A stretch of DNA of 63,958 nt, the filler included, from Bigelowiella natans CCMP2755 (taxonomy: Eukaryota; Protista; Cercozoa), in assembly GCA_000320545.1 (NCBI GenBank). It is 7 parts of 7 records of this genome, joined end to end, with 100 filler letters (N's around TTAATTAATTAA, not from the genome) between each part and the next. Parts side by side here need not be neighbours in the genome. Positions count along the whole stretch, not along the records: positions 1 to 21,438 come from ADNK01002049.1; 6 more parts are not named here. One strand, written 5' to 3'. This document shows, one piece after another, positions 1,568 to 21,438 of the stretch; the first letter of the stretch is position 1; the number at the start of each line of letters is the position of its first letter. The notes under the pieces are model-generated. The model saw only the letters and a list, made by a program, of their open reading frames with translations, had not been told where the DNA came from and did not search any database. The position numbers and the translations under genes were made by a program.

Positions 1568-1604
<37 letters not shown>

Positions 1605-3106
1605 GGGGGGGGGGTTCAGGAGCAGTCCGTTGAGTACGACCGAATAACAGGGGTCCCAGCGGAATACAATGAACATCTTCCCCGCGACTCCCCTGAGTTT
1701 AGGAGGTGGAGCGAGACGCAGCCCAAAAAGGCAGGATCACAACACTGCATAAAATGCTATTTAGAATGAAACTTGGAAGTCTAGTCGCCACCACCTGGTC
1801 GATGAGGACCTTCTTCGTTGCTCTTTCTATCTGTTACTCCGCACGAAATTCTCTCTGTGCCACGAAGAACACTCCCTACGTGAAACATCCTTGAAGTTTC
1901 CAGTAGATTCTGATTGATTCCGCAGCAGCTAACCATTCGTTGTTGGGCCGCAGGACGTCTCGCCCGCCGCTCATTCTTCCCGCTCCACCTCGTCGTCGAA
2001 AGAGGTCCTCGTTAGAATCGGCACGAGAGCGTTCAAGAAACCGGTGAGGAGTCGTGCTTGCAGAACCCCCTTTCTGTCCTCATTCACAATGGCGCATGTA
2101 TGTTTTCCCCTGCGATTGAATGACATTCATTCGCTACCACTACCATTACTACTACTAGTACTACTACTATTTCTGTACATACCACTACCACAAACAACGC
2201 GTCGCGTAATAATCGTTGGTGTGGAAGGGGACCCTGGTCATTGGCCTCGACAGCTACGGCATCGAGCTCTCAGACGCCAAGAAGAAATTTGCTAAGAAGG
2301 TTGCTGAGCGAGGAGTAGACGTGACAGGCCGTGCGCCATAGCGGAGGAGAATAAAGGGGAGGAGAAAGAAATCTAAATACATCCCATTTTTGAGTTGTTT
2401 TGGTTTGGAAAAAAAAGGCTAACCATAAGAGAACGACAGGCCTGAAACGTAGTGAATGAACTATGAATTGATATCTACAAAGCTTTCTCATCCTCCTCCT
2501 TCTCCTTCTGACTTACGCCATGCGACATAAACCATTAAAGTTCGCTTGCGCGTGCTCGGTCGGAAAGAGCTGCAAGGAGACAAACAAACCACACGTTTTC
2601 ATCCAAGGAAACAAGCTCTACGATGTACGTGTTGACGACGATATGATGATGAAGATGATGATGATGATGATAGTGATGATAGTGATAGTGGTACGACGAA
2701 AACGATCCCGGTGATAGTGAGAACACCATTCTTAATGTTACAAATCACGAGAAAACGATAGCAGAGAGAGGCGTGCTGCAGATACCAAGCATCACAACAC
2801 ACGCATGCCCATGCACACACAGAACACACAACACATATTCCACACTCACGACTATTCGTCCGAGCATGTCAGTACCGCTACTAGCATATTGGCATCGACC
2901 TTATCTTTATAACCAATTATCATCAGCACATCAGCACATCAGCACATCGCCACCACATAATGATAACGCCATTCGTCTTACCGACATAGTTGCCTGGTCT
3001 TCTAGTGGAACTCTACGGCAGTACGAATGGGATCACGCGAGCGGCTATCAAGGAGCTTCAAAAGGACGGGAAAAAACGAGCCATTCCGGACATATATGCT
3101 GATTAA
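786..3106 (+). CDS. DENR: Density-regulated protein / Tma22 (SUI1-domain translation reinitiation factor), multi-exon; start uncertain
   Basis: Exons translate to an acidic N-terminus (about 1016-1310), VEYDRITGVPAEYNEHLPRDSPEFRRW, KEVLVRIGTRAFKKP, TLVIGLDSYGIELSDAKKKFAKK, FACACSVGK...VFIQGNKLYD and a last exon ending TAA at 3106. KKFAKKFACxCSV and IQG are DENR SUI1 signatures. Confidence 0.8.
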
Positions 3107-4215
3107 TGAAACAGGAACATTTGTGCCTATCTAGCTATGTAGCTAGAAAGTGTGTCTGTCTGCTCCTCACACATTCAACGTAACGAAGGATACATCTCCA
3201 TCTCGCGCGCGCGCGCATCTGTCTGGTGCATGGTGTGCAAAGATGTGTGGCATACCCAGATGTACCATACATAATGCAAGGACAGATTCGAAGGCCAATG
3301 TTTTGCTTCCCAACTCCTGTCTGATGTGTGCTAGATGTCACAACATGTCGCCAGAAAGGGAAGCTTTGTTTGGTGGTGATACCATGCGCAAGATGGATGG
3401 AGTGAATATGCAGGAGACATGATCAAGGTGACACATGCTGTCCCACTGGCCGACAGCAAAAAAAGGTTGCTCGCTTGCATTTCACATGAAAACGCTCGTT
3501 ATGTGCTAGCATGCGCACGTGAATGCCATGCATGCCCCCCCTTTCTAGTCTTCAGCAGTGCTAGAGTGTGCTGCAGTGCACCGCCAGGCACGCACATGGT
3601 TTTGGGGGGAAATTGCCCAGCCTGCTACAGCCCACCGCTGCTGCACTTGCACACACGTGTCATCAAATCACTCGTCAGTGGAGCACGATTGTTGTGCAAT
3701 CTGTGGCGCATGATGCACACAACACACACGCGCTTAGTGTGCCTATGCGCCCCCGTAGCAGTGAAGTCAGTCTGACTGGGTGGGAACACTCGGCTTCAAC
3801 CATCACTTCAAGGCGAGTGGTCATTTGGACTTGCATGCGCTTTGGAGAAGACAAGAAGAAGAAGAAGAAGAAGCGTTTGCACAAGGCGAAAAAGTGTTAA
3901 CGCATCACGGAGTGCGCTGATCAGCGCGCTTGTCAACGAAAGGATCATTGAATTGGACGTGAAAGGACAAAGAAAAAAACGCAGTGTCCCGCACAAGGCA
4001 GAATTGAAACTGCATCATTGAACACTCTGATGAGGCGTTTCAAACAATGTTCAAGCTGATGGTGTAATATTGGCCGTCTTGCATCACACAAATAGAACGT
4101 GAGAATTTGATTGCAGCATTCAAAGCTCAACACAAAAGAGAAAAGCATAGTGTACATTGTCATTAAAGTAGATCATTAATGGTGTGAGCAGAGTTGTTCT
4201 GAAGTCAGGCCGGCA

Positions 4216-5023
4216 TCAGATTAGGGCTTTTATCTTTGCTATTTTGGATTTGTATTCGTCATCGCTTATCTCGTTAACCTCTTTCAGTTTCATAACAGCC
4301 TCGATTTTAGCCACGAGACTGTGACTAGATTTCGACGAAATGCTAACCTCGCGTGGAAGCTGCTGTTGGCTAAAAGGTTTGCCCAATCTTGCAGAAGGTG
4401 ATGCCTGCGGTGACCCCGGAGGACTTGCAACTGGGTAACTTACGGGATGTGGTGGTGACAAAGGAGAACTATCTCCTTTTTTAGACTGCCTCAGAGTAGC
4501 ACGCCGTTTGCAATGACAACTTGGTTGGTAATTATAGTCACCTCCACGAACTACTTGCCCATTCGCTCCCGGTTTATTCGCTTCTGGCTTGCCGTAGAGG
4601 CGATGCATCATTTTTACAAATAGGATTCCCTTTTGCGTAAGTTTAAATATCTCGCAACGACCTCCGACTTTTTTCTCTAGAAGACCATGCTTGATAAGGG
4701 TTTTTTTGGAGCTCCAGGCTCCAATAATCGTATTGTAGTTCTTTTTTATCCAGACGTGATTCTTGTTCGGTGGAATCAAAGTTTCCATTGGATGGTCACA
4801 GTAACGCTGTGCCAACATCTAAGAACACCAAAGTACATAATGATAATGAATGAGATGTATCAAAAAGCTGAAGAGCAAATATGAATATCAGGCGACAATC
4901 TATATCTAGAATGTAGTCTTGGCCAATACAGGAGACCATCTTTGTGTCTAATATAATTTTTGTTTCCTCATCTAGCGCTTTAGTTCAATGTCTTACATCC
5001 TTCATTATCATCATGTTCTTTTT

Positions 5024-5064
<41 letters not shown>

Positions 5065-5479
5065 GTCTCTGTCTGTCTTTTGTCACACATGTCGCTAATG
5101 TTTAAATTATTTCAGCCGACAACAATATGCGACTATGTTTGTAGTAAGTAAATATTTCCCCCAACCTTAATCTCATAGCTCCGTTCCCATTCGACATTCT
5201 TCTCCAGCAGCCAAGCCATTGCTGTAAGGATAGCCTCGGGCCCACTTCTTCTCTTCAATTTCAGTAAGTAGCCTCGGAATGTGTTGCTGAAATCACACTT
5301 CAGAATTCCAGGGTATTTATCCGGAAGGATCTCTTCCTCGTTGAGAAGAACGCGCTTCATGGTCTTAAGAACGGTTGATTCGATCCCATCGGGAGCATTA
5401 CACACCTAGCAGGTATATATATTTTAAAGATTCTATATTTTGCAATATTAATGATAAAATTTTGACATCGGTTGACGCA

Positions 5480-5522
<43 letters not shown>

Positions 5523-6870
5523 GTTGGTCAACTGTCTTTACTGTGATTCTCCCCTTCTTGTGTTCTTTAAGTCTTTTGTATGCATTCCATAACGCCGAAT
5601 GACGGTTGCCTCCATGATAAAGAGCGAAGAGAAGACGATGCTAGAATATATCGAAGATCAAAGCTCGATGTGAAAATACACGTTGCTGAATAGTGAAGAG
5701 GTTGTTTGTGATATTATTCCTGAAATAAAAATTCATGTACTTCTATAGATAACGCATTAATATTCGAAGAAATTTCTACCTTAATTGCGTCTGTAAGTTC
5801 ACTTTTGCTCCGTTGCTTCTTTGACGACTTTCGTCCAATCTAATAGTATAAGCAAAATCATCAAAATTACAAGATGTGGTGAGGAGGATAACTTGTAACT
5901 TTGTTTCTATGGCTCTCGTTACCTTTTGCATTTTTCTTAAACGCTTCATACGTTGAGTGATAGCCTGCCATTCAGATGTGCAACATTTATGAGCAACTTC
6001 AGAAGTAGCCTGTTTCTTTGTGGAAGTAGTAGCCCATTTGCTGTAACTTGATTTCGAAGGAGGAGAATGAACGGATTTGAGCCCCGACACACATTTACTG
6101 CTTTTCACATCCTCTTCGTCGTCACTTGAGATAAGCGAGACTACTTCTTGAAATGCAGCATCTACTTTCTGCACATGCGTCGTTTTTGCTTTTGTCGTTC
6201 TCGGCTTTATTGAGCGTAGGGAGCTCAGAATATCTACTTGCTTCATCCTTTTTCTTTTACATCCTATGCTTGCCCCAATCACTTTCTTTAGGCTTGTATC
6301 TTTCGTTGCTTCTTTCAACTTCATGTTGAGTCGATTTCGGTCACCCATTTCTCGCTGGTATGGAATGATTTTGGAATGTGTAACTCGCGCTGAGAAGAGG
6401 GTCTCGCATAAGGTTTGCGCTTCATCATTGAGCGACACAAAATATACCATGTCGTAGCTTTAAAATTCCAGGAGTTGACTCGTCTTATATCCGAAGAAGG
6501 ATGAAGAAAAATACATTCTGCACACAATTCTGCAGAGATCTGCAGAGATCTGCAGACGCGCACATTTTCAACAACGGGATTGATTTCAAACCTACGACAA
6601 AGAAATTGAGGCATTAAACATTGGCTGTGGCAGATACGAGTACGGCACTACAAATAGAGATTTCGGTATGAGGTTTGTGGGGAGGAAAATGCATGGAATT
6701 CCTGACTGCGACATGCAAAATGATGCTTTTCTGTATTAATTCTGCCTTTCTGCGTGCAGAATTCCACTTTTCTGTGCAGTCGGCATCATTGACGATGGAG
6801 AAAGAAAAACTAGCACAGACCCGCTGAGCAAATGTAGGGCGTTTTTGGCGGAAATGGGCAATCATGTAAT
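4216..6870 (-). CDS. Multi-exon protein with Mus81-type winged-helix domain(s), partial GRF-like Cys motif and SHOCT-like C-terminus; 5' part possibly disrupted
   Basis: KRRSGPEAILTAM...LAQRYCD...AWSSKKTLIKHGLLEK...FKLTQKG follows the Mus81 winged-helix consensus (RSGxYAIL...AQxYCD...AWSSMKTLI...YxLTxxG). PSCHCKRRATLRQSKKG resembles a GRF finger start. KLKEVNEISDDEYKSKIAKI is SHOCT-like. No ERCC4 nuclease motif seen. Confidence 0.6.
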
Positions 6871-6899: not shown

Positions 6900-7694
6900 A
6901 TGGACAGTGGCAACTTGCAGGATAGCGCAAGAACTTGGAGAAATCAGACGTCCATCACGATCCAACATTTCAAAACACAACAACAACTTCCAGTCACTGT
7001 AATCATGGCTACAATTCAGCAGCAAGAGAACAAGACCACGGCAGGCGCCGCCAGCGTCCATGACGACTCTCTCAATTTAATCAATGTTCAATATTTAATC
7101 TTCAGCAACGTCAGTACGCAGAACGACGAGCCAATACTATTCGGCATCGAAGACACAGTTGGGCTAGACCCGATAACCGGTCATGAGAATACACGTGAAG
7201 ATGTAAATTCAATACAACCAATGGAATCTGGGCCTTCACACCAGCCGGATGATCTCTGCGAAGAGGATCGATGTATGGCATCTGATGATGCGAAATTGAA
7301 TACCTCCTCCTCCCGTCAACTTGGACCATCGACCACATCCCATTCACTTGATCCTAATGGATCTCAAGGGCTCAGTATCCTCCCCATTCCGAATCCTCGT
7401 TATATGAATCAGAACCAGACCCTAGGGCAGATTTCACTGCAGGATTCCAAGTGCTCTAGACAAAGAGCGAGAACAAGCTGCATGATATGTGTAGCGAGAA
7501 GAGTAAAATGCGAAGGAGGATTTCCATGTAATTCTTGCAAGTTTCACAAAATTGAAAAGTATTGCGAATTATGCCCAATGGGGGGAAAGGCTGAGGCACA
7601 AAGACTATATGATTATTTACAAAAACAACACTGCTCCAGATCTTCTTGCTGTAATAAAATGCGATTCCACGGTGGAAAGTGCAAAAAGAAATAG
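6900..7694 (+). CDS. Zn(II)2Cys6 (fungal-type) DNA-binding protein with an extra C-terminal Cys/His motif
   Basis: RARTSCMICVARRVKCEGGFPCNSCKFHKIEKYC fits the CxxC-x6-C-x5-CxxC-x8-C binuclear cluster. C-terminal CSRSSCCNKMRFHGGKCKK. A small intron near the 5' end is possible. Confidence 0.85.
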   Translation: MDSGNLQDSARTWRNQTSITIQHFKTQQQLPVTVIMATIQQQENKTTAGAASVHDDSLNLINVQYLIFSNVSTQNDEPILFGIEDTVGLDPITGHENTREDVNSIQPMESGPSHQPDDLCEEDRCMASDDAKLNTSSSRQLGPSTTSHSLDPNGSQGLSILPIPNPRYMNQNQTLGQISLQDSKCSRQRARTSCMICVARRVKCEGGFPCNSCKFHKIEKYCELCPMGGKAEAQRLYDYLQKQHCSRSSCCNKMRFHGGKCKKK

Positions 7695-8162: not shown

Positions 8163-8790
8163 GCCACACAATGGTGAGAGTTCTGCACTGACGCGCTTTG
8201 GTTTGGCGAAAGAAATTGACCGCTTTCATGGCTCTGCAAGCAGCGCATTGGCCGCATGCATGCAATTGCACATCACCCGCTAAGCAGCATGTGAGTGCAT
8301 CGCTTCGGCCTACGCATGCACTGCATTCTGCGCAAAAAGACGTGCACATTGCTCGCCGACCCAGCACGAAGCAATGGTGACATCATGAGGAAAAGGCACA
8401 GCAGAGCAAGGAACGACGAAGGGAAAAGGAAACACCGGCTTTGAAAATCAAAGAGAAACTTGATGCAAGCACGGTGGTGTGTGCACGTCAACTCCAGCCA
8501 GCTCATTGCTAGATTGGTTGTTTTCAAGGTTGAAGAGTCAAGACTCGTCTAGTCATATCCATTTTGAAGTTCCATATCGGAGTGTGCTCACTCGTGAACG
8601 AGTGTGAGCCATGCCGCCATGATGGCGTAGCGGTGAGAGAAATTAAATTGCACATTGTGACGATGCACAACCTCAAAGCATTCACCAGTTCTCGCCATGA
8701 AAGAGCTAATCATTGGCAAGGCAGTGTCAAAATGAGTTCCTCTTCATTCTTCCGCAAAATCCAAGGCTTCATTCAGTGAATTTCCCGGAT
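8163..8790 (+). repeat. Left arm of a ~630 bp inverted repeat (partner 12365-13007)
   Basis: gccacacaatggtgagag...attcagtgaatttcccggat is the reverse complement of 12365-13007, with scattered substitutions and small indels. Paired ORFs 8564-8779(+) and 12376-12585(-) give near-identical peptides. Confidence 0.95.
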
Positions 8791-8847
8791 AGATTATCCT
8801 AAAAATAATTCAAATTCTCAGCACATATACTATCAACATCAATCGAA

Positions 8848-10058
8848 TTACTTCTTTGAGGGCTTGCCGTAGTTCTCCTGATTAATGTCAATTAATTTAG
8901 CCGTGCATCCCACACATATTGTAACAAAATGTTACCATCTCCACTTCCCGTGTAGTGAATTCATTAGTGTGTTCTGCATCTTCACTCCGTTCAGCACACA
9001 TCGCTGATGCATTGACATCTTCAGTCTTGGAGCTATCCATGAGTTCAGGGTTTTTGTAGACATGATTCATAAAATGCCTGTACTGAGAACCAAGATCTTT
9101 CGGGCATTTTTTTTCAAATGATTTGAAATACGTCGTGTTCCTCTTCTTGAACTCATCATCCTGTTTCCAAATCTCATATAGATCCCGATAATACTTTTTC
9201 ACAACTTTGCTATGGAAAAGAATATGCGTTCTCGTACTCTCCACATTCTTGACCTCACTAGCAGCCTCCTTCTGTATGTCCTTATAGAACTTATGCCTCA
9301 CTACTATGATCTTTTCCTTAATTGCTTTTTCGAACCTCCTACGGTGCGGTTTTTTCGGGAAGTATTTCTCAATTTCCTCACTTTCCTGAGATGTTATAAC
9401 AATAGGAAGGATGCTAAATATTATATCCAGAACTACCCTACATACTCAGACCATAAATATCACCATGTCGCTCAAGTCCTCCAGGTATTCGTAACCACCA
9501 TCACGCAACGTTTTGACGTATTCAGAGAGACATGCTTCTTTGAGAAACTGTTCAAATTCCTCATTTTCCTGCCCCTTGCTTTTCTCATCTTGCTTATGCC
9601 CCACTACTATGATCTTTTCCTTAATTGCTTTTTCGAACCTCCTACGGTGCGGTGTTTTCGGGAAGTATTTCTCAATTTCCTCACTTTCCTGAGATGTTAT
9701 AACAATAGGAAGGATGCTAAATATTATATCCAGAACTACCCTACATACTCAGACCATAAATATCACCATGTCGCTCAAGTCCTCCAGGTATTCGTAACCA
9801 CCATCACGCAACGTTTTGACGTATTCAGAGAGACATGCTTCTTTGAGAAACTGTTCAAATTCCTCATTTTCCTGCCCCTTGCTTTTCTCATCTTGCTTTG
9901 ATAATCCGGATTTCATCTGTAAAAGAGCAGCACATTTGTGATTCTGATTAGTTGCAATTTTTGAAAGTAACGTTCGAAATAATGACCTTCTTGCTAGAAC
10001 TGGGAGGATCTTCAACCATAGGTGATTTCGCTCTCTTTAGACCAGACTTCGGCGGCAT
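8848..10058 (-). CDS. Protein with two tandem SAM (sterile alpha motif) domains, multi-exon
   Basis: Spliced across a 78-nt intron (9386-9463 and its copy): FEQFLKEACLSEYVKTLRDGGYEYLEDLSDM|ESEEIEKYFPKKPHRRRFEKAIKE is a SAM pattern, present twice. Start MPPKSGLKR at 10058; last exon ENYGKPSKK*. Confidence 0.75.
9290..9898. repeat. Near-perfect tandem duplication, 303-bp period (SAM exons plus intron)
   Basis: cttatgcc(t/c)cactactatgatc... starts at 9290 and 9593; the copies differ at very few positions. Confidence 0.95.
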
Positions 10059-10201
10059 TGACTTTGTTGCAAGCACGACCTCCTTTTTAGAATGCTGCTT
10101 GGATGAATAAAATATTAAAATGAGCACACTTTTTCCGTTTGTCAAATAACACAAAGAACTAGTTCAATTTGAAAAGCACCACATTTCCTTTCATGTGCAC
10201 C

Positions 10202-11169
10202 CTAAGTTCCCTCCTCTTGACCATAATCTAGAGGCCAGTTTAATACGATGCGGTGTACCTTCTTAATGTTATTACTGCTCTGAGACTCTTTATTTGTGGT
10301 TGTTGGTTGCTCAATATCCGTATGTTCCTCTTTAACTGGCTCTTGCAACTCTGTGGACGATGGATCATTTAGCACGCCAAAGCACTCTTCAATCTGGAAC
10401 CAAAGATGCCAAGTCAAACATTGTTCGCTAAGAGATACTTGAATCAATGTACCTTCACTAGCTCGATATCAGGGAGGCTATCATGTCTGTAGGGCAACTT
10501 TTTTCGGATGGTTTTGAGCTTTCTCAGAATCTCTTCAGAAGCAGGGATCATATATGAAACCTAAGTGCACTACATGAGGCTTTTGGCTGGTTCTAAGCGC
10601 AATTTGACAAGTATCACTTCACTACAAACCTGCGATGATGTTTGAACGTCATAGATGATCTGCAAATCTTCCACGGGTTCTCCTTCGAATCGCAACTGGA
10701 GCATCGGGTGAGCCTCCTCGTCATGTATCCATTTTTCAAATGTCTCCCGACTCGTCTGTGCCTCCAGTTTGAAATGCTCGTGAATCATGATACATCCTTC
10801 GCTCACGTAGGGCGTTTGGTGTTTTATCACTCCATTTGGAGGCTGCGTTTTGTTCCATTTCTCAAAAACACTTTCAAGAACATGATAAGCATTCCTCGGA
10901 TTGTATTTCGCCTGAGGATTATCAAAACAGTATTACGAGGACACCCGAGCCGTGCAATATGTTAGCCTAACCTTTGATAATTTCAGCGTGACTTCGACCG
11001 TATTGTTCTCGATGCACCCTTCTGGCTCTGGAATTGGAGCGCTTAGGGATCGAAATTGTTGCGGAACCTCTTCAAATAGTATTCTAGCAAAGTTCTTCGC
11101 TGATTCCACGCTTTTAAAACTAAATCTATCACTGCCATCCGACGGCTTAAATGAAAAGCGAATAGCCAT
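10202..11169 (-). CDS. Hypothetical multi-exon protein
   Basis: Successive minus-strand ORF segments (MAIRFSFKPSDG...LKLSK; ...FEKWIHDEEAHPMLQLRFEGEP...; IEECFGVLNDPSSTELQEP...) bounded by GT/AG sites. No recognisable family. Confidence 0.45.
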
Positions 11170-11338: not shown

Positions 11339-12079
11339 TCATCCTGTGGTAATGAGTAAATGTAAGACGTGGTCAAGGTTGCTAGTGAGAAGATTCAAAT
11401 TTACCCGATTCTCTGTTTGAACTTCCTGAATACCGTTTATGAGCTCATTTGCTGCGACTTTGGCGCGTTCCATCTGTCTTTCAAAGAAAGCTGTATACCC
11501 GTCTTTTGTATACCCGTCTTTCTGTTCGAGACCGGCGTAAGCTTTTTTTAAGTGCTCTTTGATATTGTATTTGTTGAAGCTACCATCTATTTTGAGGAGG
11601 CCAGTTGGTCCCCCCCTCCCAAATACGAATTTCGCACAAATGCTTCCATTTTCAATTTTTGCACGATATTGTTCCCACTTGAACTCGGTTTTATTGCTTG
11701 AGGAAGGATCGGATGAGGGTTGCAGTCTGCTGATTCGGGACCTAGAGCTAGACGAAGATTGCCGCGTGTCGTCATTCCTCATATGAGGAACCGGATTGGT
11801 TTGATGCTGCTGTCGGTTCGAGTAGCTTTGACACTTCTTTGAGGAAGGATCGTATGAGGGTTGCAGTTCGATGATCGGGGGCATAGAGCTAGACGAAGAT
11901 TGCCGCGTGTCGTCATTCCTGTGAGGAACCGGATTGGTTTGATGCTGCTGTCGGTTGGAGTAGCTTTGACACTTCTCCTCCTCCTCCCCAAACTTCCCTT
12001 TCTCCCCTAACACATCATGGCGAGAGTACGCATATTGCCCTTTGCTTTTTAACCCTGGTATGTCCCCCCCGTCCCCCAT
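11339..12079 (-). CDS. Hypothetical intronless 246-aa protein with an internal ~47-aa duplication
   Basis: ATG-initiated ORF. KCQSYSNRQQHQTNPVPH-RNDDTRQSSSSS...LQPSxDPSS occurs twice (DNA period about 140 bp, 11698-11976). Confidence 0.55.
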   Translation of the reverse strand: MGDGGDIPGLKSKGQYAYSRHDVLGEKGKFGEEEEKCQSYSNRQQHQTNPVPHRNDDTRQSSSSSMPPIIELQPSYDPSSKKCQSYSNRQQHQTNPVPHMRNDDTRQSSSSSRSRISRLQPSSDPSSSNKTEFKWEQYRAKIENGSICAKFVFGRGGPTGLLKIDGSFNKYNIKEHLKKAYAGLEQKDGYTKDGYTAFFERQMERAKVAANELINGIQEVQTENRVNLNLLTSNLDHVLHLLITTG

Positions 12080-12364
12080 TGTCTTTGATGTGATCAGGGA
12101 GACGTCGAACCGCAGACAGATGGTCGGTTACCAAACAACAAGCTTCATTTGGTGTTTGTCGGATTTTCTTCAAATTTTCCTGAAAACACAGGGCATTGTT
12201 TGGACTGCGACAAGCTCATGGATGTGATCAGCATCACATAGGCATGCGGAGGGTTTTCAAATCGGACACGATGGTCCTCGCAATGAGTTTTGTTGAGGCG
12301 CTGCTGCACGCATCGCATCCCATGTGGCTCTTGCGCAAGTGGATTTGCATCAATGCTGTGTTCC

Positions 12365-13007
12365 ATCCGGAAAATTCACTGAATGAAGCCTTGGATTTTG
12401 CGGAAGAATGAAGAGGAACTCATTTTGACACCCTTGCCAATGATTAGCAATTGATGATTGGCTCTTTCATGGCGAGAACTAGTGAATGCTTTGAGGTTGT
12501 GCATCGTCACAATGTGCAATTCAATTTCTCTCACCGCTACGCCATCATGGCGGCATGGCTCACACTCGTTCACGAGTGAGCACACTCAGATGTGGAACGT
12601 CAAAATGGACATGACTGGACGAGTCTGGACTCTTCAACCTTGAAAACAACCAATCTAGCAATGAGCTGGCTTTAGTTGACGTGCACACACCACCGTCTTG
12701 CTTGCATCAAGTTTCTCTTTGATTTTCAAAGCCGGTGTTTCCTTTTCCCTTCGTCGTTCCTTGCTCTGCTGTGCCTTTTCCTCATGATGTCACCATTGCT
12801 TCGTGCTGGGTCGGCGAGCAATGTGCACGTCTTTTTGCGCAGCAGAATGCAGTGCATGCGTGGGCCGAAGCGATGCACTGACATACTGCTTAGCGGGTGA
12901 CATGCAATTGCATGCATGGCCGATGCGCTGCTTGCAGAGCCATGAAAGCGGCCAATTTCTTTCGCCAAACCAAAAGCGTCAGTGCAGGACTCTCACCATT
13001 GTGTGGC
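12365..13007 (-). repeat. Right arm of the ~630 bp inverted repeat (partner 8163-8790)
   Basis: atccggaaaattcactgaatgaagcc...ctcaccattgtgtggc is the reverse complement of the left arm. Confidence 0.95.
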
Positions 13008-13099
13008 CAGTTTCATCAGTGGCAGTGTTGGCCAGAGTGAAAATGATGTCTAATGAACAGGATTGATGACTTAGAATGGCAGTAGATCCCGTCACAGCT

Positions 13100-16000
13100 A
13101 GACCACACAAGTGCACACATCAAGCGTTGTTTGTGTCCAAAATCTGCATGCGCTAAGCGCTCCGGCCTGGCACTTCACCCATGCCACCTTGCAAGAACAA
13201 AAAATGGCCAAAGTGCATGATGGCATGCTAAATGCATTCAGCCGAACTATGGCCAAGCTGTTACCAATGTCATCATCATGCTGCACCTCCTCGAATCTCA
13301 TTGCTTCTGCGCTGTTTGTAGCAGCTTGTGCGGCTCATTTGAAAACTTCCACAACTTCGTCTAACAAAAATTGTGGAGTTGCTTGCACGCAAGGAAGCAA
13401 CGAACAATCCAAAATCCCGCAACCTTTTGACAGCATCACATCAGTCTGCGATGAACCAGATCCCATGAAAATTTTGTAGGCTCGAGCAAACGAGCTGCTC
13501 GAGATAGCGCCTAAATATCATCACAAAATGTTGAAACGAACATTGCAAATGATCAAAGTTTTCAACAATGATGATAGCGATTTGTGTACGTAGCATGCAC
13601 CGTGCACGTGTACACAACGCATGCAACGTACATGCTACAAGTGAACGGTGCGATGCGATGCGAGAGTAACAAAGCGCAGTTGATCATCGTCGCTCTGCAC
13701 ATGCAACACACATGACATGCATAGACGTGCAGCATCTGCCGTCATGAATCACATGACCACCATGTGCCTCGCATGGATGAACAGGAGAAAACCCATTTTG
13801 CGGACGGATGATGACTCTGGACATATCACATGCAAAGATCGAAGCACCAAAGGAAGTGTATGACATCAAGGAATTTCATTCAAACTTCTGGAGTGCTGCA
13901 GTTCGCCACCAAGTCAACTCTGCGCAACCAACGCCATGCAAGATGATGCTCCTAAGATGTACGAGTTTGAGCATGCTACTTGCCCTCTCAATCCCCAATC
14001 GGACACTCTCGATCGCAGCTGGCGACTGGACATCTCTGCATATTGCCTCATTCTTGCGATTACGTTGGTTCGTTTTCTTTAAACATTCTTCGAGGCTCTG
14101 GACATTTTCTTTTGAGAGGTTCTCAAGGAGAACAGAAATAGATACGGGATAGAGACCGCAAGCAAAATCTTCTTCTAGTATCAAGAAACTAGAGCAGTTT
14201 ACTGAGGAATTCTCGAGATTACCTGAGGCTTGAATCCAATGAGTTCCTATGTTACAATAGCAATTGTCAATGTTGTTGGGGAACTAACAAAATAGAAATT
14301 ACCTGGAGGAATAGAATTCAAAATCTTTTTTGGTAAAGTTCTTTTGGACGATATTGCCTCCGAGTCCAATGATAGATATCCGATCCTTGCATCAGACTTC
14401 AAAGATTCAATAACTTCCTTGAGGCCAGCAGCTGCCTTTTCTTCCGCTTCAGATTTCTCAGAAACAGATTTCTCAATGATTTGCTGCAATGTATTACAGA
14501 GAGAAGTCGGGTTCGAAGCATTACTATTTAATCGAGTGCTGTCGAGAGCGTTATACACATCGTCAGCAATTTCTTCATCCTCTGTCAGCCGATTCACCCA
14601 ACGATTAATTCTAGAAGATCCTTTCATCAAGAATTCCTTCCTCTTTTTCATCTCAGATTCTGGAAATTTTTGAGATGAATGAATCATTTGCATGAACATC
14701 AAACTTCTTTGCATCGAAGAGTCCAATGTTTCAAAGCACCGAAAACCTGGGTTTGAATTGTATTCCTGTACCTACAATCAATGATGGACAATGTTATACA
14801 GCAGCTTGCGAGTTTGAATGAGTAAGTGCATTGTCATACCTGGCTAACATTGCCACGAATTAGAAACGCTGACGGAATCTTTAGCCCCTCGGCAACTACT
14901 TGCATGAGAGTCGACTTCATGTGGTATGTCAGAAAACTATCTTTCTCATTTCCTGCTTTACACGAGTATCTAACGGGAACAACATTTTCCATAGAAGGAG
15001 GCTTTTGTTCGCTATTTTCTTCATAGAAACACATCAATAAATAGTTGAGCAGGTTGCCCTCGGATCTTAGATTCTGAACAAAGGAATTGAATTCCGTCTT
15101 CTTCACGGAGTAATCGTACAAGATCGGATAAAGCCCTAACTTTGATTTTTGGGCACGTTGATTGTCAGATTTGGAAACAGGTGTAGGGACGTTACATGAT
15201 CGAATGCAATCTTCGATTGTCGTTTCAGTTTCTTTTGAATATCTCATGATGATTTTCTTATTGATCCTGTCAACAATGACTGAAATTCCTTCGTGGTTAG
15301 CATTCTCCCTTTCCACATATTCCCTTTCCACATATTCGCACAAATCGGCTGGCTTGCACCTCCTCAAACCATAAAAGAGTAGATCTAATCCAGCCTTGAT
15401 TTTGTCATCTGCTTTGTCAATGGTCTTGTTTTTTTTGTTTTTCCTTTTCCTGCCATAGAATGAGTCGACCTTCAATTTTTTCCCCTTCCGCAGCTGTTTA
15501 AGACTATTAAGAAGATCTGTTCCGTTGAACTTGTTTAAAATCCTGTCATTGTATTCGTGATGTTTGAAATCGTAAGCTTCAGATGTATCTATATCATCTT
15601 GTGGATTGTACGCATTCTGGTCTTCACGCGAAGGTGGAATTAAAGCTCTATTGGTCATATGTCTGTCCACCAACTTTGGTTTTGGATATGAGCTTGCATC
15701 CCAAATGAATCTGCGTCTGCTTTTAGTCAATTTGTGACTACGTTTCTGAAACCTTGTGACCAGATATTTCAAGTTCAAATATTCATCATCGTAAACCCGT
15801 TTCTTGATACCCTCCTGAATTTCATACAGATCAAGTGCTTTCACTTCTTTGATGCCTAGAGTCCTTAGGATCTTAGAGACTCTTATATCCTGTTTGTCGA
15901 GCATCTTGAGTTTACTGTTAGACTCATCATCCACTTGCTCAGTGTAGAAAGAATTTTCCTTCGCCTTAATCCAGAATTGCTCCACAACATTCTTGAGTTT

Positions 16001-17304
16001 ATTTCTACACTGATCAACCACTTGCTCAAGGTAGAAAAAGCTTTCCTTCGCCTTCTCCAACCTATCCTTTACCTCGCTCATATCGAAATCTTCAGTTTTT
16101 TGCAAATCTTCCAATTCCTGATCAAATTTTACATCTGATGTGATTGTGTCCAACAGATGGTTCCCAGCTTTCTTTGCAACTTCCTCTCCTATGCTCTCCA
16201 GTTCTTTCAAAGTTTTCGTAACACTCTTGGACAAGTCCAAAATCGTCTTGCTGTGCTTATTATTTACGTATTCTTGGACGAGCTTACTGAATTCTTCTTT
16301 GTGCTCTTCTTTTTTGGACTTTTGGTTTTTGGGTTTTTTATCTCCTGACTTTTCTCCTTTGTCGTGGTAGTCGGCGAAGAATGGGTGTTCCATCACGTTT
16401 TCAATAGTTTCTGTCCTATAAATATCGTCAACAATGGAGCTTTTGTATTTGTTAAAGAGATCGACCAGATTTTTGTCAGTTCCTTCAGGTAGTCTTAAAT
16501 ATTTCTTATCAACTGTCCTCGGATTGAATTGGCATTTAGCGTCATTGTCATAGTAAGGGACAAATGCAACACTATTAGGCCGTTTTAAAAGTAGTATGCA
16601 TCTTGTGATGGCATATATGTCGCGAAATTCAATCGCCTTTACCCTGTTCATTATATTTGCTGGAAAAATTATAAACATATACACATACACAAAAAAGTCA
16701 ACCTAGAACTGCTGTGTGTTCAGAAGAGAATACCTTCTCTTATCGTCTTGGTAGGTATGAAGCCATCGCTCCATACAATTTTCTTGGTTGTTGTTCCAAC
16801 TTTTTGGCAACCTCCAAAATCGGTCAGAAGAACACTCTAGTGGAAGATGATAGAAGTAAAATCAAACAGAATTGCCCAGAGTCACACGTTGTTACTGGAT
16901 CTTCGGCATATGTTTTTAAGTGTACACATTGTGGTCTTTAGTGGAGATTCTTACCCCATCAGTGCGTAAAAGAATGTTTTCCAGTTTGATATCACAGTGG
17001 ACATAACCAATTTTCTTGAGCTGCTTAGTACCCTACGCAGATAGAAACGTAATTAGACATCTTTATTTGTGTTGAAACTTACAATCTTCACCTCAGCTAT
17101 GTTCCAGATAATGTGCTTTATGATCGAGTCTTTCATTGAATTCGATGAATCTGAACTAGAATTTCTTTTGTTTTGGTAGTACCTACACCAACAATGTTAA
17201 GTAAATATTATCTCCTTACCCATGCGCTCAAATAGATCGCGAACAAAATAATATTTTCAACCGAAATCTGCAAGCATGTATCCCCCCCACGGATATTTTG
17301 CGAA

Positions 17305-17345
<41 letters not shown>

Positions 17346-20300
17346 TGAATGGTGACAAATGCAACTATTATACGCTGTTAGAAATTGCCGTTCAAATGAT
17401 ACAATGTGACGAAAGATGAATGTGTGATATGCTGATAGCCACTGAAAGTTCCACTGATGGATAACTTTCACGATGAAGCGCGGCTCAGAAGAAAAGAAAA
17501 TATAGATTACATGCACACACGTAGCTGCTGTTGAATATGATGAATGGATGGGAGGAATGTAGGGATTCGTACCACTTTCTGAACGACTTTAAATCTCCCG
17601 CCGAACAATACTCCATAGCATAGGCCAGACTGCCATCATGTAATTCTTCTATCTTTCCATAAAATTTAGGACCGTATTCACCCATATTGTTGAGGATTTC
17701 AACCTCTCTATCAAACGTTTTTTCGAATGGTTTGCGTTTTTTGTTCGGTTTCAGTTCGCAGTACTTGACAGCAAAAGTAGTATCATCGTCTCCGGTACTC
17801 CGGCACAGAAAAACTTTACCAAACCCCCCCGAGCCAATCTTGAATATTTTAACGAGCTTTTTCATTGAATAACGTTTTGATTTTCGCCTGGGACCTTTTG
17901 ACGATGGAACAGCAAAATGCTTTTGGCTAATAAGAATGTTTTCAATGAGACCCAGCGCCGCCTTCCTCTGTACTTCTATTTCCTCTTCATTTCCCTTTGA
18001 TAATTTGCAAAACTGGGTAGCGATATTCTTGACATTTTGTTGTGCTAATTCTTGCAATTTATCTTTAATAGACTGTTCATTTTGTGTAAAAATAAGTCCA
18101 TCATAGAAGTCAAAGTCTAAATCTTCATCAAAATTATTTTTTGGTCTCGCAATAGACATATTATTGTGAGCGTTCTTTCTGATTATGGACTTCCTTAGAA
18201 TCGTAGAAATCCCACCGTCTGCAGCCGTCAACGCGTCCTTCAGGTGGGCGAGAGTAAGATGTTGATAGAACGTTTTCAAATCTTTTCTACTGCGGTTGAA
18301 GAGCTGCTTTATCATTTCCGCAGTATCGTAACTTAGTTTATTGTGACTTGATTCCGGGTTCGGAAAATATTTCTTTTCGCATATCCCATCACATACTTCA
18401 TTTATTTTGCCTTCGGAATCGCGGGTTGCGTACCATTTTCCATCCTTACATTCAAACTCCGGGGTCTCACTAATCAGAAATAATATGAACTCTGCCTTAC
18501 TAAGTATCTCGTCCATGTAGTGTTGGTTTATCGTCAAGTCCTCTTCTCCTGTGTCATCTTCGAGGTTTGGAGCTGCAGGGGTTCCAGCTGCTAGCACATT
18601 TGGATCGTCAGAAGCAATCAGACGGATCTTAAGATCATTCTGTGCCTGTCCAAGAACCCGATCTCGGAGTTGCCGCCGCCCTTCATCCATCTTATGCCCC
18701 CAAACATCTTTGAAAATTGCCTCCCGACCAGCTATCCCCGGTCCACCTTCGAAGCTATTTGTACAGAATACGAGTCGAAGAGGGGCACTTTGTGGTTCCC
18801 GTTCTTCGAATATCCCGCACTCCGCTAATGGTTTGAAGTCATTCTTGCCCGCTTGGCCTAGTGTGGAAAACACGGATCGCATTGGAATCTTCTACGAACA
18901 GAATCTCAAACATGTAGTTCTTACAGATGACGAATAAGATGTCAATGTCCTTTATGACGCTTCGAATCTGACTAGCCTGATAAAAACGTCCAATGCAAAA
19001 CCGCAGTAGCACACATAACGCACACGCTTACAAGTGGTGGAACACGATCTGTTCCTCAGACATGAGGAAGGGGGAGGAATATAGAAAGAAAAGATCTAGT
19101 TTTAATCCTTATTGTTATCAGTGAAGGTGTTTGTGGCATTGAAAGTTAGACTAAATCACACTGTAGTACCTTTTGCGTATTTGCCCTCGCATCAGGATAT
19201 CCCGGAAGATCGTATAAGACGAACTAAAATTATCTACATCGGAAGGCATTCGAATGCTAGCACAATAACAAATTTACCCCTTCTCTGGAAATACCAAATG
19301 GCCTCTTTTCATGCCCTAGATCGCGCTTAGGACCATTTTTAGGATACAATTGAGGACCATACTTGATGTTGATGCATTTTACACTGTCCAAATACTCGTA
19401 AGAGTTCCCTTTTTGGTCTGTATCTGAACAAAGAATTACGTTCAAAACAAAGCTTTCAAATTCAATTCAAAAACCAAATTAAAAAAGATATTAATTCCCG
19501 TCACTTTTGAGGTCAAACGCGGCCTTGATCCTATCCTGAATTTTCCTCAACTCGCTCTGTACAAATTGAATTTCATTCGAATAGGACTATCAATCGAAGA
19601 TTAGTAAAAAAATACCACTAATTCTTTGGGTTCTTTTACGTCCTTAAAATCGAAATAATCCGTGGTGAGCAGTTCGTCAATTTTTCTCTTCTCTTCTTTT
19701 CCTACTTCAGCAGTTTGCTTTAGGGATTCGAGCCTCTTCCTGCCGTGATCCTTCCACTCAATTGTAATGGTAGGGTGTTCTGATTTAAAAATATAGAGGT
19801 TGGGAATGCTGCAAGTTACACTTTGTTACAATAATGACATCGCTAAATACTGCAGAGGGTCTAGGCTTCGACTACCTAAATTTGGTACATATGTCCATTT
19901 GCATATGAACGTGGTCAAGCCTACGTCTTGTCTCTGAGGATCATTAAGTGCAAATGAAGAGAACTGACAATCGCTTATTCAGAGCTCCTCTTACCCCTGA
20001 AGCCTCAGACTGAGCTAGAAAGTATTTCTTGTATTTATCTTCATTCAGAGGATCTACGATCGGATGCAGTGGTGATAGAAAAACAATATTGTTGCGTCAA
20101 TACAGGGTTGCCCTTTGGAATAGACAGGGAGATTCTTCAACTGCTCACTACTTTCGCCGTATATGAGGTAGTTCGTTAACATAGACTTTCCAGTTTGTGG
20201 TCGTCCAAAGAAGGCAACCTATATTAATACAAAAGGACATAATGAGCAAAATACTAGAGTGTGAAAGTTTCAATTTCTAATCTACCTTGATCTCTTTTAC

Positions 20301-21202
20301 GTTTTGTTTCTATTCACAACAAAAACAATGTATCAGTATATTAACAAAGGCATAATACGAAAACCAAAAGTCAAAACGAAGGAAACCTCTTGAGACTTCT
20401 CCGCAAGCTGTTTCAGGTGCGGCATGTAGGCGAAATGATTGACCTTGAAAATGAAACAAGTATGAAAAGTTATTTCTTATGGTGTACTTAAAGCTGCGTC
20501 TCAACACTTGTCACACTATGCTCTTCGTCAAATTACCGGAGCACTCCAATCCCAATCCTCACCCTTTACTTTCAAAATTTCCAACGTTTCAATTGCTTCT
20601 TTCTCCTCTTTTTTGATCGCGTCTTGAATATCTTCGTCGGTTGGATGATTTGACGCTCCAGAAGAGTAATTGTAAGTTTCTGTTATACTTATGCTGGTGG
20701 GGACCTTCATGTCTTCTAAATTATTTTCCCATTTTTTGGTGGATGGGCATAAAGATTCTGTTCCTCCTCGTTCGGGTTTTTGGATATTAGCAGCTTGAGT
20801 CTGTAATTGGAAAGTACTCAATTTGAAATTTCAGGTAACTAATAGGAGAAGTAAACCTTCTGTCTTTTGCCAGAGGAACTACTCTCAGCATCATCTCCTG
20901 AATGGTAAATATTCACATATTATCGTCTTTGTTATGCTACAGCTGTCTATTCGGCATATTACGTCGTCTCTTCTCGCTCTGTTTCGGTTTCTTGCTAGAT
21001 TTCTGGGCAGAAGTCTTTTCCTAAAATTTATTTGTCCTTTAGCAACTATAGAACGATACACCAATACATGCATCTTACCTCTTTCTTGTGTTCGGATATA
21101 AATCGATAGAACTGTTACAAACAGCAAGCATAATAGTTAGTCGCACGAAATCACACCAAAAGGATATGATTTTCGATGTACCTTGATTTCTTCTATTTTC
21201 AT
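13100..21202 (-). CDS. Large multi-exon gene: dynamin/SLIP-GC-like P-loop GTPase + Ser/Thr protein kinase + coiled coil + unknown C-terminal region; 3' end (about 13100-14150) degenerate, 5' end may run to the contig gap
   Basis: G1 VAFFGRPQTGKSMLTNYLI (about 20165-20218), G2 VGLTTFICKWTY (about 19890-19925), G3 FVLYDLPGYPDARA (about 19180-19223), G4-like LVFCTNSFE at the start of ORF 17485-18882. That same ORF contains kinase IGSGGFGKVF, FAVK, REVEIL and AMEYCSAGDL. Later exons give YVHCDIKLENILL, LLTDFGG, DIYA and EHPFF. Confidence 0.8.
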
Positions 21203-21338
21203 GTCCTGCCGCAGTGCCCTACCAATCGCCTGATCAATTTTAAAAATGAAACTACTCACAGCTGACAACCAATGTAATGTATGGATGAATATTTAACGAG
21301 TAAGTACTTTTAATATGAATGCATAAACAACCACATAA

Positions 21339-21392
<54 letters not shown>

Positions 21393-21438
21393 CTTCTCTC
21401 TCTCTCTCTCTCACACACACGCACACACACACACACGC

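What the first reader, a model, noticed from the sequence alone, without database searches (positions are those of the whole stretch)
14200..21202. Dynamin/SLIP-GC-like GTPase fused to a protein kinase
Seen: the GTPase is split over small exons the ORF track misses: G1 GRPQTGKS, G2 GLTT, G3 DLPG. It continues IDILFVIC|QAGKND...LVFCTNSFE into the ORF holding kinase subdomains I-V. HCDIK, DFG and the Lys/Glu pair are intact, followed by a coiled coil and over 500 aa of unknown sequence. Known: dynamin-like GTPases (Mx, GBP, bacterial DLPs) are often antiviral, and the familiar GTPase-kinase fusion (Roco) uses a Ras-like Roc-COR unit, which is not seen here. Inference: an architecture I do not recognise, perhaps an oligomerisation-activated defence kinase.
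Basis: partly seen in the sequence, partly recalled or inferred. Interest (0 to 1): 0.8.

Follow-up and report, generated by a model that had tools for sequence, protein, structure and literature searches.

The report
Dynamin-like NTPase fused to protein kinase
A single-copy, expressed nuclear gene of the alga Bigelowiella natans joins a dynamin-family-like nucleotide switch to an intact-looking protein kinase in one 1823-residue protein; the combination is unusual and has no detectable relatives, and its function is untested.

Summary
The window is a whole 21,438-bp nuclear contig of Bigelowiella natans, not human. On the minus strand, 22 exons (21232..13879, stop 13878-13876) match a public transcript-derived ORF (P0001, 1823 aa, MMETSP, "type:complete"). 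All 21 introns are GT-AG, and only 6 residues differ.

Exon 16 alone (18857-17573) encodes the end of the NTPase domain, a ~290-aa orphan linker and kinase subdomains I-V. The fusion therefore does not depend on splicing or transcript assembly.

The kinase clears Pfam's threshold and keeps its catalytic residues, with HCD in place of HRD (non-RD).

The NTPase is probably dynamin-family, on three weak lines of evidence:
- Pfam Dynamin_N is below threshold (17 against 27 bits).
- Language-model neighbours are all Dynamin_N clusters.
- My hhalign test aligns G1-G4 in register to a bacterial dynamin-like profile. Roc and MMR_HSR1 profiles match nothing beyond the P-loop.

G4 reads NSFE instead of NKxD, so guanine specificity is unproven. 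No dynamin stalk, Roc or COR was detected.

The linker and the ~790-aa C-terminus have no relatives in any search, and the gene has no paralogue. The defence and oligomerisation ideas remain untested. I class it as a new variant of GTPase-kinase fusion proteins, of moderate interest.

The parts
13876..21232 (-). Part of the gene held in this contig: 22 exons encoding residues 26-1823 of the transcript ORF P0001, plus the TGA stop (13878-13876). Exon limits (high..low): 21232-21182, 21111-21079, 21020-20963, 20897-20857, 20800-20537, 20443-20387, 20309-20286, 20218-20152, 20053-19995, 19933-19876, 19779-19616, 19556-19505, 19423-19278, 19223-19170, 18976-18925, 18857-17573, 17182-17092, 17032-16955, 16836-16734, 16659-14840, 14771-14303, 14246-13879.
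   Evidence: k-mer mapping of P0001. Unique GT..AG solution at all 21 junctions. 6 aa differences and the stop codon.
20537..21232 (-). N-terminal region (aa 26-175, exons 1-5). Charged and low in complexity, with basic runs such as KKPKQSEKRRR (20993-20961) that look like a nuclear localisation signal. No family match.
   Evidence: The NLS reading is an inference from sequence only.
18748..20309 (-). Dynamin-family-like P-loop NTPase domain (aa ~194-455), spread over exons 7-15 and the first 110 nt of exon 16.
   Evidence: Pfam Dynamin_N 250-421, E = 0.0058, 17.1 bits, below the 27-bit cut-off; MMR_HSR1 on the P-loop. Atlas neighbours are all Dynamin_N, score 0.94. hhalign against 38 cyanobacterial Dynamin_N ORFs gives prob 90-92% over 170 columns, aa 199-454.
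20183..20206 (-). G1 / P-loop GRPQTGKS (aa 206-213)
19910..19921 (-). G2 / switch I candidate GLTT (aa 248-251)
   Evidence: Aligned to the conserved Thr of the dynamin-like profile.
19200..19211 (-). G3 / switch II DLPG (aa 388-391)
   Evidence: Aligned to D-s-P-G of the profile.
18748..18765 (-). G4-equivalent CTNSFE (aa 450-455). N452-S-F-E455 aligns to N-K-x-D of the profile, so the Lys is lost and the Asp is replaced by Glu.
   Evidence: extended hhalign alignment
17573..18857 (-). Exon 16, one uninterrupted 1285-nt exon (aa 420-848). It holds beta4 to G4 of the NTPase, the orphan linker and kinase subdomains I-V, and is the physical proof of the fusion.
17878..18747 (-). Orphan linker or 'middle' region (aa 456-745), with no relatives and no dynamin-stalk similarity.
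   Evidence: HMMER against 1.84 billion proteins hit only P0001 outside the kinase. hhalign against full-length BDLP-size proteins scored 17.4, with shuffles reaching 23.0. The AF2 model is unusable, pLDDT 33.
16367..17877 (-). Protein kinase domain (aa ~746-1035) over exons 16-20. Motifs: G-loop 17835-17812; Lys783 in FAVK 17775-17764; Glu803 in DREVEIL 17712-17692; HCDIKLEN 16999-16976 (non-RD, Ser/Thr-type DIKxxN); DFG 16821-16813; TIRE (APE-equivalent) 16746-16735; DIYAITRC 16621-16598; HPFF 16387-16376.
   Evidence: Pfam Pkinase 5.7e-22, 78.8 bits against a 31.7-bit cut-off. Residue-by-residue alignment to NEK1 and TrkB. PADLOC kinase models cover 756-1020. Coordinates.
15767..16366 (-). 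Highly charged region (aa 1036-1235; 20% K/R, 21% D/E) with long predicted helices. A coiled coil is possible but not shown.
13879..15766 (-). Orphan C-terminal region (aa 1236-1823; rest of exon 20, exons 21-22). No family, no relatives and no paralogue.

Best explanation
This is a real, intact, expressed, single-copy nuclear gene of Bigelowiella natans. It encodes an 1823-aa multidomain signalling protein in this order:
1. A charged N-terminus.
2. A divergent dynamin-family-like P-loop NTPase, with G1, G2 and G3 canonical and G4 reading NSFE.
3. A ~290-aa orphan linker.
4. A divergent but catalytically complete non-RD Ser/Thr-type protein kinase.
5. A charged helical stretch.
6. A ~590-aa orphan C-terminal region.

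Shown: the gene structure, the single ORF, the kinase membership and its catalytic residues, and the absence of Roc/COR.

Probable: the dynamin-family affiliation of the NTPase.

Inferred mechanism, by analogy with dynamin-superfamily G domains and with ROCO kinases: the nucleotide state of the NTPase controls the kinase. This would most likely work through nucleotide-dependent G-domain dimerisation or self-assembly that brings kinase domains together. The orphan C-terminus would supply localisation or target recognition.
For: Organism and transcript:
- P0001 is an MMETSP transcript ORF marked 'type:complete'. It shares its 90% cluster with the JGI Bigelowiella natans model 77899.
- The genome is 91.4 Mb.

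Gene model:
- Colinear mapping to 22 exons.
- All 21 introns (54-390 nt) are GT-AG and reproduce the protein.
- 6 differences in about 1800 aa, and the stop codon is present.
- Exon 16 alone spans NTPase beta4-G4, the linker and kinase subdomains I-V.

Kinase:
- Pfam Pkinase scores 78.8 bits.
- Lys, Glu, HCD, Asn and DFG align to NEK1.

NTPase:
- Dynamin_N is the only GTPase family that matches beyond the P-loop in Pfam.
- 10 of 10 atlas neighbours are Dynamin_N, score 0.94 with 184 shared features.
- hhalign against a profile of 38 cyanobacterial Dynamin_N ORFs gives prob 90-92% over 170 columns, G1-G4 in register. The score is 52-54, against a maximum of 38.8 in 40 controls with the P-loop kept and the rest shuffled.
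- With the P-loop removed, the score is 32.0, against a shuffle maximum of 19.3.
- Roc (18.1) and MMR_HSR1 (20.8) profiles lie within their shuffle ranges.

Single copy: own-genome searches found only this locus plus distant kinases at 29% identity or less.
Against: - Pfam Dynamin_N is below its gathering score (17.1 against 27 bits).
- My own plain HMM of the cyanobacterial set gave only 9 bits.
- A profile of BDLP-size orthologues alone gave prob 9%.
- No stalk or GED similarity was found.
- G4 lacks the Lys and has Glu for Asp, so GTP specificity is unproven.
- Both AlphaFold2 single-sequence models were unusable, pLDDT 33 and 35, so no fold comparison was possible.
- The homodimer prediction gave no verdict.
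- The G-domain residues 176-419 were never searched by exhaustive HMMER against proteins of all lengths. They were covered only by a word search among 1003-3190-aa proteins and by atlas features.
- The regulatory mechanism rests entirely on analogy.
Confidence: 0.6

Rival explanations
1. The protein is an innate-immunity or conflict protein: a large Mx/GBP/IRG-like GTPase that oligomerises on sensing a virus or other invader and switches on its own kinase as the effector.
For: - Dynamin-like G domain.
- Non-RD kinase, HCD. From general knowledge, non-RD kinases are over-represented among innate-immune receptor kinases.
- Taxonomically orphan linker and C-terminus, as expected of fast-evolving conflict genes.
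- B. natans is reported to carry provirophages; the papers were listed but not read in detail.
- PADLOC defence-kinase models match the kinase core, but they are generic kinase profiles.
Against: - The gene is single-copy with no paralogues, and immune families are usually expanded.
- It is expressed in ordinary culture transcriptomes.
- No relatives were found in viral contigs.
- The neighbours have no informative domains.
- There are no infection or induction data.
- The oligomerisation test gave no verdict.
Confidence: 0.15
2. The NTPase is not dynamin-family. It would be another, unclassified TRAFAC or P-loop NTPase that happens to share G1 and a DxPG switch II. The protein would then be a kinase with a novel NTPase module, possibly one that uses ATP.
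For: - Sub-threshold Pfam score.
- The plain HMM score of 9 bits is no better than cross-family background.
- G4 is degenerate, NSFE.
- No stalk similarity.
- The G1-G3 spacing of about 175 aa includes inserts that are absent from the bacterial profile.
Against: - The hhalign alignment covers G1-G4 in register and beats all shuffles even without the P-loop, while the Roc and MMR_HSR1 profiles do not.
- All ten atlas neighbours are Dynamin_N.
- No other GTPase family appears in Pfam at E < 0.1 beyond the P-loop.
Confidence: 0.2
3. Artefact: two adjacent genes (NTPase and kinase) joined by a chimeric transcript assembly or by gene-model over-extension.
For: - The JGI model P0007 is clearly over-extended. 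It adds 741 N-terminal residues with an SNF2 domain from the neighbouring contig, and it splices past the transcript's stop codon.
- Residues 1-25 of P0001 are not found in the assembly.
Against: - Exon 16 is a single open 1285-nt exon that carries the NTPase beta4-G4, the linker and kinase subdomains I-V, so no splice or assembly join lies between the two domains.
- The whole 1798-aa stretch is one frame-consistent ORF across 21 canonical introns.
Confidence: 0.03
4. A lineage-specific gene with little or no enzymatic role. It would be a scaffold, pseudo-GTPase or pseudo-kinase drifting in one genus.
For: - No detectable orthologue outside Bigelowiella in 1.84 billion representatives for aa 420-750.
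- G4 is degenerate.
- The kinase is very divergent: the best non-self hit has E = 2e-5.
Against: - Every catalytic kinase residue, the P-loop and switch II are intact.
- The 1823-codon ORF and all 42 splice sites in the contig are preserved.
- The gene is transcribed.
Confidence: 0.1

Closest known systems
ROCO proteins (LRRK2, Dictyostelium Roco/GbpC, bacterial Roco)
   Same: One polypeptide in which a G domain sits N-terminal to a protein kinase, within a very large protein that has extra scaffold regions. This is the likely logic of a nucleotide-switch-controlled kinase.
   Different: ROCO is defined by a Ras-like Roc domain followed by COR. P0001 gives no Pfam Roc or COR hit. Beyond the P-loop, hhalign against a Roc profile of 26 cyanobacterial ORFs is at chance. 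The G domain here is about 260 aa with dynamin-type inserts.
Dynamin superfamily, Pfam Dynamin_N (PF00350): bacterial dynamin-like proteins such as BDLP/DynA/LeoA-type
   Same: - G1 is GxxxxGKS.
- There is a switch-I Thr.
- A beta-hairpin plus insert lies between G2 and G3.
- G3 is D-x-P-G.
- The beta4 and G4 strand positions align in register over 170 columns.
- The nearest atlas clusters are all this family.
   Different: - It is below Pfam's threshold.
- G4 is NSFE, not NKxD.
- There are extra inserts at about aa 226-243, 290-340 and 359-377.
- No helical stalk, neck or paddle similarity was found.
- It is fused to a kinase.
SLIP-GC / NUGGC-type eukaryotic dynamin-like GTPases
   Same: From memory only: a Dynamin_N-type G domain with DLPG and a nuclear location. 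The N-terminus here has NLS-like basic runs.
   Different: Not tested. No reference sequence of that family was obtained, so this stays a lead.
Interferon-inducible large GTPases (Mx, GBP, IRG)
   Same: Large G domains that act through nucleotide-dependent self-assembly. IRGs also have DLPG.
   Different: No sequence match to the GBP or IIGP Pfam models at E < 0.1. None of those families carries a kinase.
Eukaryotic protein kinases of the non-RD type; nearest solved structure NEK1 (4apc)
   Same: Full set of catalytic motifs. NEK1 is the best solved match, E = 6.7e-12.
   Different: - Very divergent: the best non-self hit in 1.84 billion proteins has E = 2e-5, and the best paralogue in the same genome is 29% identical.
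- There is an insert of roughly 15-20 residues before the catalytic loop relative to NEK1.
- The motif is HCD instead of HRD.

Membership tests
Eukaryotic protein kinase (Pfam PF00069) | Score above Pfam's gathering threshold | tested here: met
   78.8 bits against 31.7, E = 5.7e-22, aa 757-940. PADLOC kinase model PDLC04044 covers 756-1020.
Eukaryotic protein kinase (Pfam PF00069) | Catalytic residues: G-loop, VAIK Lys, alphaC Glu, HxD Asp, catalytic-loop Asn, DFG Asp | tested here: met
   GSGGFGKV, K783, E803, H-C-D891, N896 and D909-F-G all align to the NEK1 equivalents (coordinates). The Arg of HRD is Cys, so the kinase is non-RD.
Dynamin superfamily (Pfam Dynamin_N PF00350) | Score above Pfam's gathering threshold | tested here: not met
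   17.1 bits against 27, E = 0.0058, aa 250-421 on profile positions 32-138.
Dynamin superfamily (Pfam Dynamin_N PF00350) | Profile-profile similarity over the whole G domain, specific to this family | tested here: met
   hhalign against 38 cyanobacterial Dynamin_N ORFs gives prob 90-92% over 170 columns, aa 199-454. With the P-loop removed, the score is 32.0 against a shuffle maximum of 19.3. Roc and MMR_HSR1 profiles are at chance. This is a home-made profile from one phylum. A narrower BDLP-orthologue profile gave only prob 9%.
Dynamin superfamily (Pfam Dynamin_N PF00350) | G1 GxxxxGK[ST], G2 Thr, G3 DxxG | tested here: met
   GRPQTGKS (206-213), GLTT (248-251) and DLPG (388-391).
Dynamin superfamily (Pfam Dynamin_N PF00350) | G4 [N/T]KxD guanine-specificity motif | tested here: not met
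   The aligned position reads N452-S-F-E455. Asn is kept, Lys is lost and Asp becomes Glu.
Dynamin superfamily (Pfam Dynamin_N PF00350) | Helical stalk, middle domain or GED after the G domain | tested here: inconclusive
   hhalign of aa 456-750 against full-length BDLP-size proteins scored 17.4, with shuffles reaching 23.0. AF2 predicted helices, but at pLDDT 33. Stalks diverge fast, so this absence of signal is weak evidence.
Dynamin superfamily (Pfam Dynamin_N PF00350) | Nucleotide-dependent G-domain dimerisation or assembly | tested here: inconclusive
   The homodimer prediction of aa 176-520 gave no verdict. Biochemistry is needed.
ROCO (Roc-COR-kinase) | Ras-like Roc domain (PF08477) | tested here: not met
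   No Pfam hit at E < 0.1. hhalign against a Roc profile covers 43 columns, the P-loop only, at prob 10-14%. Without the P-loop the score is 18.1, within the shuffle range.
ROCO (Roc-COR-kinase) | COR domain following Roc | tested here: not met
   No COR family among the Pfam hits at E < 0.1 on P0001.
SLIP-GC / NUGGC-like GTPases | Specific sequence kinship with NUGGC-type proteins | not tested

The most novel reading that the evidence does not exclude
The protein is a protist cell-autonomous immune sensor and effector. A dynamin-like NTPase would assemble on a pathogen- or virus-derived structure, recognised through the orphan C-terminus, and directly activate its own non-RD kinase. That would be an Mx/GBP-like module hard-wired to a kinase output, evolved independently of ROCO.
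Probability: 0.12. Interest if true: 0.75.

Novelty: new variant of a known kind. Interest (0 to 1): 0.45.

Why it matters
GTPase-controlled kinases are known almost only as ROCO proteins, which include LRRK2. A second, independently assembled solution would be a natural experiment in how nucleotide switches are wired to kinases. Here the switch is a large dynamin-type NTPase, a kind that normally works by self-assembly.

It would also add a lead to the almost unknown signalling and defence repertoire of rhizarian algae.

The practical value is limited for three reasons:
- The gene is a singleton confined, as far as can be seen, to Bigelowiella.
- Its non-catalytic two-thirds are orphan sequence.
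- No functional data exist.

The public annotation lists only the kinase (precomputed Pfam). The JGI model is over-extended into a neighbouring SNF2 gene. The corrected gene structure is therefore itself a useful result.

Tried and rejected
Attempts that led nowhere:
- AlphaFold2 on exon 16 (aa 420-848) and on exon 20 (aa 939-1544), run without an alignment because no homologues exist. Mean pLDDT was 33.1 and 34.9. The models were unusable, so I ran no fold search.
- Complex prediction on a homodimer of aa 176-520: no verdict, score 0.00. This is neither for nor against binding.
- Pfam on single exons: the NTPase exons are too short to score.
- PADLOC and NCBIfam on P0001 gave only generic kinase and P-loop matches.
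- A PDB sequence search returned kinases only in the top 60.
- Word searches for relatives found only the protein itself or nothing: the G domain, the C-terminus among long proteins and the C-terminus among 333-1060-aa proteins.
- The atlas found no usable hit for aa 1230-1823.
- IMG/VR viral contigs, JGI metagenome contigs and tblastn against PLSDB plasmids held no relatives.
- The look-up of encoding contigs has no record of P0001.
- phmmer of the G domain against the genome's own canonical dynamin loci found nothing.
- Plain HMMs built from bacterial Dynamin_N, Roc and MMR_HSR1 ORFs did not discriminate. Only profile-profile alignment did.
- The contig cannot be extended: it ends at 21438.
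- A literature search for a Dynamin_N + Pkinase architecture, or for this gene, found nothing relevant. The B. natans diurnal-expression paper has no supplement held.

Ideas rejected:
- Recent viral insertion. The gene has 21 spliceosomal introns and no viral relatives.
- Human origin. The contig is from Bigelowiella natans.

Joined step left out:
- I sent no spliced model of my own to any tool. Exons were searched by reference.
- Whole-protein and residue-range analyses used the database protein P0001 as returned by the tools.
- In scripts, exons were compared one at a time. Only spans of 8-10 codons across each junction were joined, to test the splice sites.

Full report
**What the window is**

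The piece 1-21438 is the whole of contig C1688 of a 91.4-Mb, 3736-contig assembly. A HMMER search with the 468-aa open frame 18891-17488 against 1.84 billion representative proteins gave one strong hit, P0001 (1823 aa, E = 9e-290). Every other hit was a distant kinase at E >= 2e-5.

P0001 is an MMETSP transcriptome ORF (Transcript_43945, "type:complete"). The only other member of its 90% cluster, P0007, is the JGI Bigelowiella natans gene model 77899. The contig is therefore nuclear DNA of the chlorarachniophyte alga Bigelowiella natans, not human.

**Checking the observation**

P0001 maps colinearly onto the minus strand in 22 blocks from 21232 down to 13879.
- For each of the 21 junctions there is exactly one GT..AG pair that reproduces the transcript's protein across the junction. 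Introns are 54-390 nt.
- Compared exon by exon, the genome-encoded residues differ from P0001 at only six positions. A TGA follows the last codon.
- The guessed splice IDILFVIC|QAGKND is the real exon 15 / exon 16 junction.

Exon 16 (18857-17573) settles the fusion. It is one uninterrupted exon that encodes residues 420-848. These cover the last strands of the NTPase including the G4 position, a long linker, and kinase subdomains I-V. The fusion therefore does not depend on splicing or on a transcript assembler.

Two corrections:
The last exon is 14246-13879.
- Its 5' end is incomplete here. Residues 1-25 of P0001 occur nowhere in the assembly and presumably lie in the gap before the neighbouring contig C1687.

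The JGI model bridges that gap and adds 741 residues with an SNF2-related domain from C1687. It also splices past the transcript's stop. I take this to be over-extension into a neighbouring gene. The "complete" label of the transcript ORF implies its own start, though that label is the assembler's call, not proof.

**The kinase**

- Pfam Pkinase scores 78.8 bits against a 31.7-bit cut-off over aa 757-940. A PADLOC kinase profile covers 756-1020.
- In the alignment to NEK1 (4apc, E = 6.7e-12) every catalytic element matches: GSGGFGKV, Lys783, Glu803, His-Cys-Asp891, Asn896 and Asp909-Phe-Gly.
- The alignment to TrkB places TIRE at the APE position. DIYAITRC and HPFF mark subdomains IX and XI.
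- DIKLEN is the Ser/Thr-type catalytic loop. Cys in place of the HRD Arg makes this a non-RD kinase.
- It is very divergent. The best paralogue in the same genome is 29% identical.

**The NTPase**

Pfam gives only a P-loop match to MMR_HSR1, plus a sub-threshold Dynamin_N match (aa 250-421, 17.1 bits against 27, E = 0.006). No Roc, COR, Ras, septin, GBP or IIGP hit appears at E < 0.1. The atlas search on aa 176-480 returned Dynamin_N clusters for all of its best hits, with score 0.94 and 184 shared features.

The domain is split over nine exons, and the tools take no self-joined model, so I could not fold it or scan it alone. I built a discriminating test instead.
- From 100 cyanobacterial genomes I took ORFs that match Dynamin_N (38), Roc (26) and MMR_HSR1 (30).
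- I made one profile per family and aligned residues 176-520 of P0001 to each with hhalign.
- The dynamin-like profile aligns 170 columns from aa 199 to 454 (probability 90-92%, score 52-54). G1, the switch-I Thr, the following hairpin, the strand before G3, D-x-P-G, beta4 and the G4 strand are all in register.
- In forty controls with the P-loop kept and the rest shuffled, the score reached at most 38.8 and the median alignment length was 23 columns.
- With the P-loop removed, the score is still 32.0, against a shuffle maximum of 19.3.
- The Roc (18.1) and MMR_HSR1 (20.8) profiles fall within their shuffle ranges and align only the P-loop.
- The extended alignment puts N452-S-F-E455 on the profile's N-K-x-D. 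The guanine-specificity motif is therefore altered: Lys is lost and Asp becomes Glu.

Caveats to the test:
- Plain HMMs of the same sets did not discriminate.
- A profile of BDLP-size orthologues alone gave only 9% probability.
- Residues 456-750 show no similarity to bacterial dynamin stalks.

I conclude that the domain is probably (about 0.7-0.75) a divergent dynamin-family G domain of unresolved subfamily. Its nucleotide preference is unproven, and no recognisable stalk follows it. Kinship with SLIP-GC/NUGGC specifically was not tested.

**The rest of the protein**

- The N-terminus (aa 26-175) is charged, with NLS-like basic runs.
- Residues 1036-1235 are 41% charged. AF2 predicts long helices there at low confidence, and my crude heptad test was negative, so "coiled coil" is possible but not shown.
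- The linker and the last ~590 residues have no family and no relatives. This held in Pfam, the atlas, word searches at two length ranges, viral contigs, metagenome contigs and plasmids.
- There is no paralogue in the genome.
- Both AlphaFold2 runs failed for lack of an alignment.

**How it most likely works**

What is shown is the architecture: an intact nucleotide switch and an intact kinase in one chain.

The rest is inference from established behaviour of the two families. Dynamin-superfamily G domains hydrolyse on nucleotide-dependent G-G dimerisation and drive self-assembly. ROCO proteins show that a cis G domain can gate a kinase. I therefore propose that nucleotide-dependent dimerisation or assembly of the NTPase domain brings the kinase domains together and activates them, with the orphan C-terminus providing localisation or target recognition. 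A homodimer prediction gave no verdict. I put about 0.3 on this mechanism, and 0.6 on the overall statement that includes the dynamin affiliation.

It has no direct support. The gene is a singleton, it is expressed in ordinary cultures, and it has no viral relatives or informative neighbours.

**Comparison and novelty**

The protein works like a ROCO protein but fails both defining ROCO features, Roc and COR. Its G domain resembles Dynamin_N proteins but fails Pfam's threshold and the G4 motif, and it shows no stalk.

I found no description of a Dynamin_N-kinase architecture in the held literature. I could not run a domain-architecture query, so its rarity is not established.

The gene already sits in public catalogues, where it is annotated only as a kinase and is mis-modelled. 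I rate it a new variant of a known kind (GTPase-kinase fusion proteins). Interest is 0.45: the architecture is real and unusual, but the gene is a lineage-restricted singleton with no functional evidence.

Exons were searched by reference. Full-length and residue-range work used the database protein P0001. Scripts compared exons singly and joined only 8-10 codons around each junction to test the splice sites.

Noticed in passing
G000 contig C1687:515-3475 (minus), loci L020-L026: The gene immediately upstream, across an assembly gap, encodes an SNF2-related helicase-like protein. Pfam SNF2-rel_dom matches at 6.6e-13 in the N-terminal 741 aa of the JGI model P0007. The JGI model fuses it to the NTPase-kinase gene. 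The transcript ORF P0001 does not include it.
   Followed up: partly
window 9290-9892: A tandem duplication: two 300-nt copies, 99% identical, with 303-nt spacing. It produces a repeated ~100-aa segment in the + strand ORF 9212-9901. There is no family match apart from a chance-level Gemini_AL1 hit.
   Followed up: partly
window 6900-7694 (+): An ORF with a CX2CX6CX5CX2CX8C cysteine pattern (CMICVARRVKCEGGFPCNSCKFHKIEKYC) that resembles a Zn(2)Cys(6) binuclear cluster. Pfam Zn_clus scores only E = 0.038, below threshold.
   Followed up: partly
window 11339-12079 (-): An orphan ORF that contains a ~45-aa unit twice (..KCQSYSNRQQHQTNPVPH.RNDDTRQSSSSS..). It has no Pfam match.
   Followed up: no
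window 1-21438: The GC content is a mosaic. It is 0.38-0.40 across the NTPase-kinase gene and at 4500-6000 and 8500-10500. It is 0.49-0.52 at 500-4000 and 12000-13500. The low-GC blocks coincide with minus-strand orphan ORFs.
   Followed up: no
window 21310-21438, 17280-17330, about 1500-1600: (GA)n and (GT)n microsatellites. One lies at the contig end just upstream of the first exon present. Another lies inside the 390-nt intron 16 of the gene.
   Followed up: no
window 18882-18858: An in-frame ATG lies 9 codons upstream of exon 16, inside intron 15. It is the start of the listed ORF 17485-18882. An intron-retaining or internally initiated transcript could therefore encode a kinase-only product. 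No evidence was examined.
   Followed up: no
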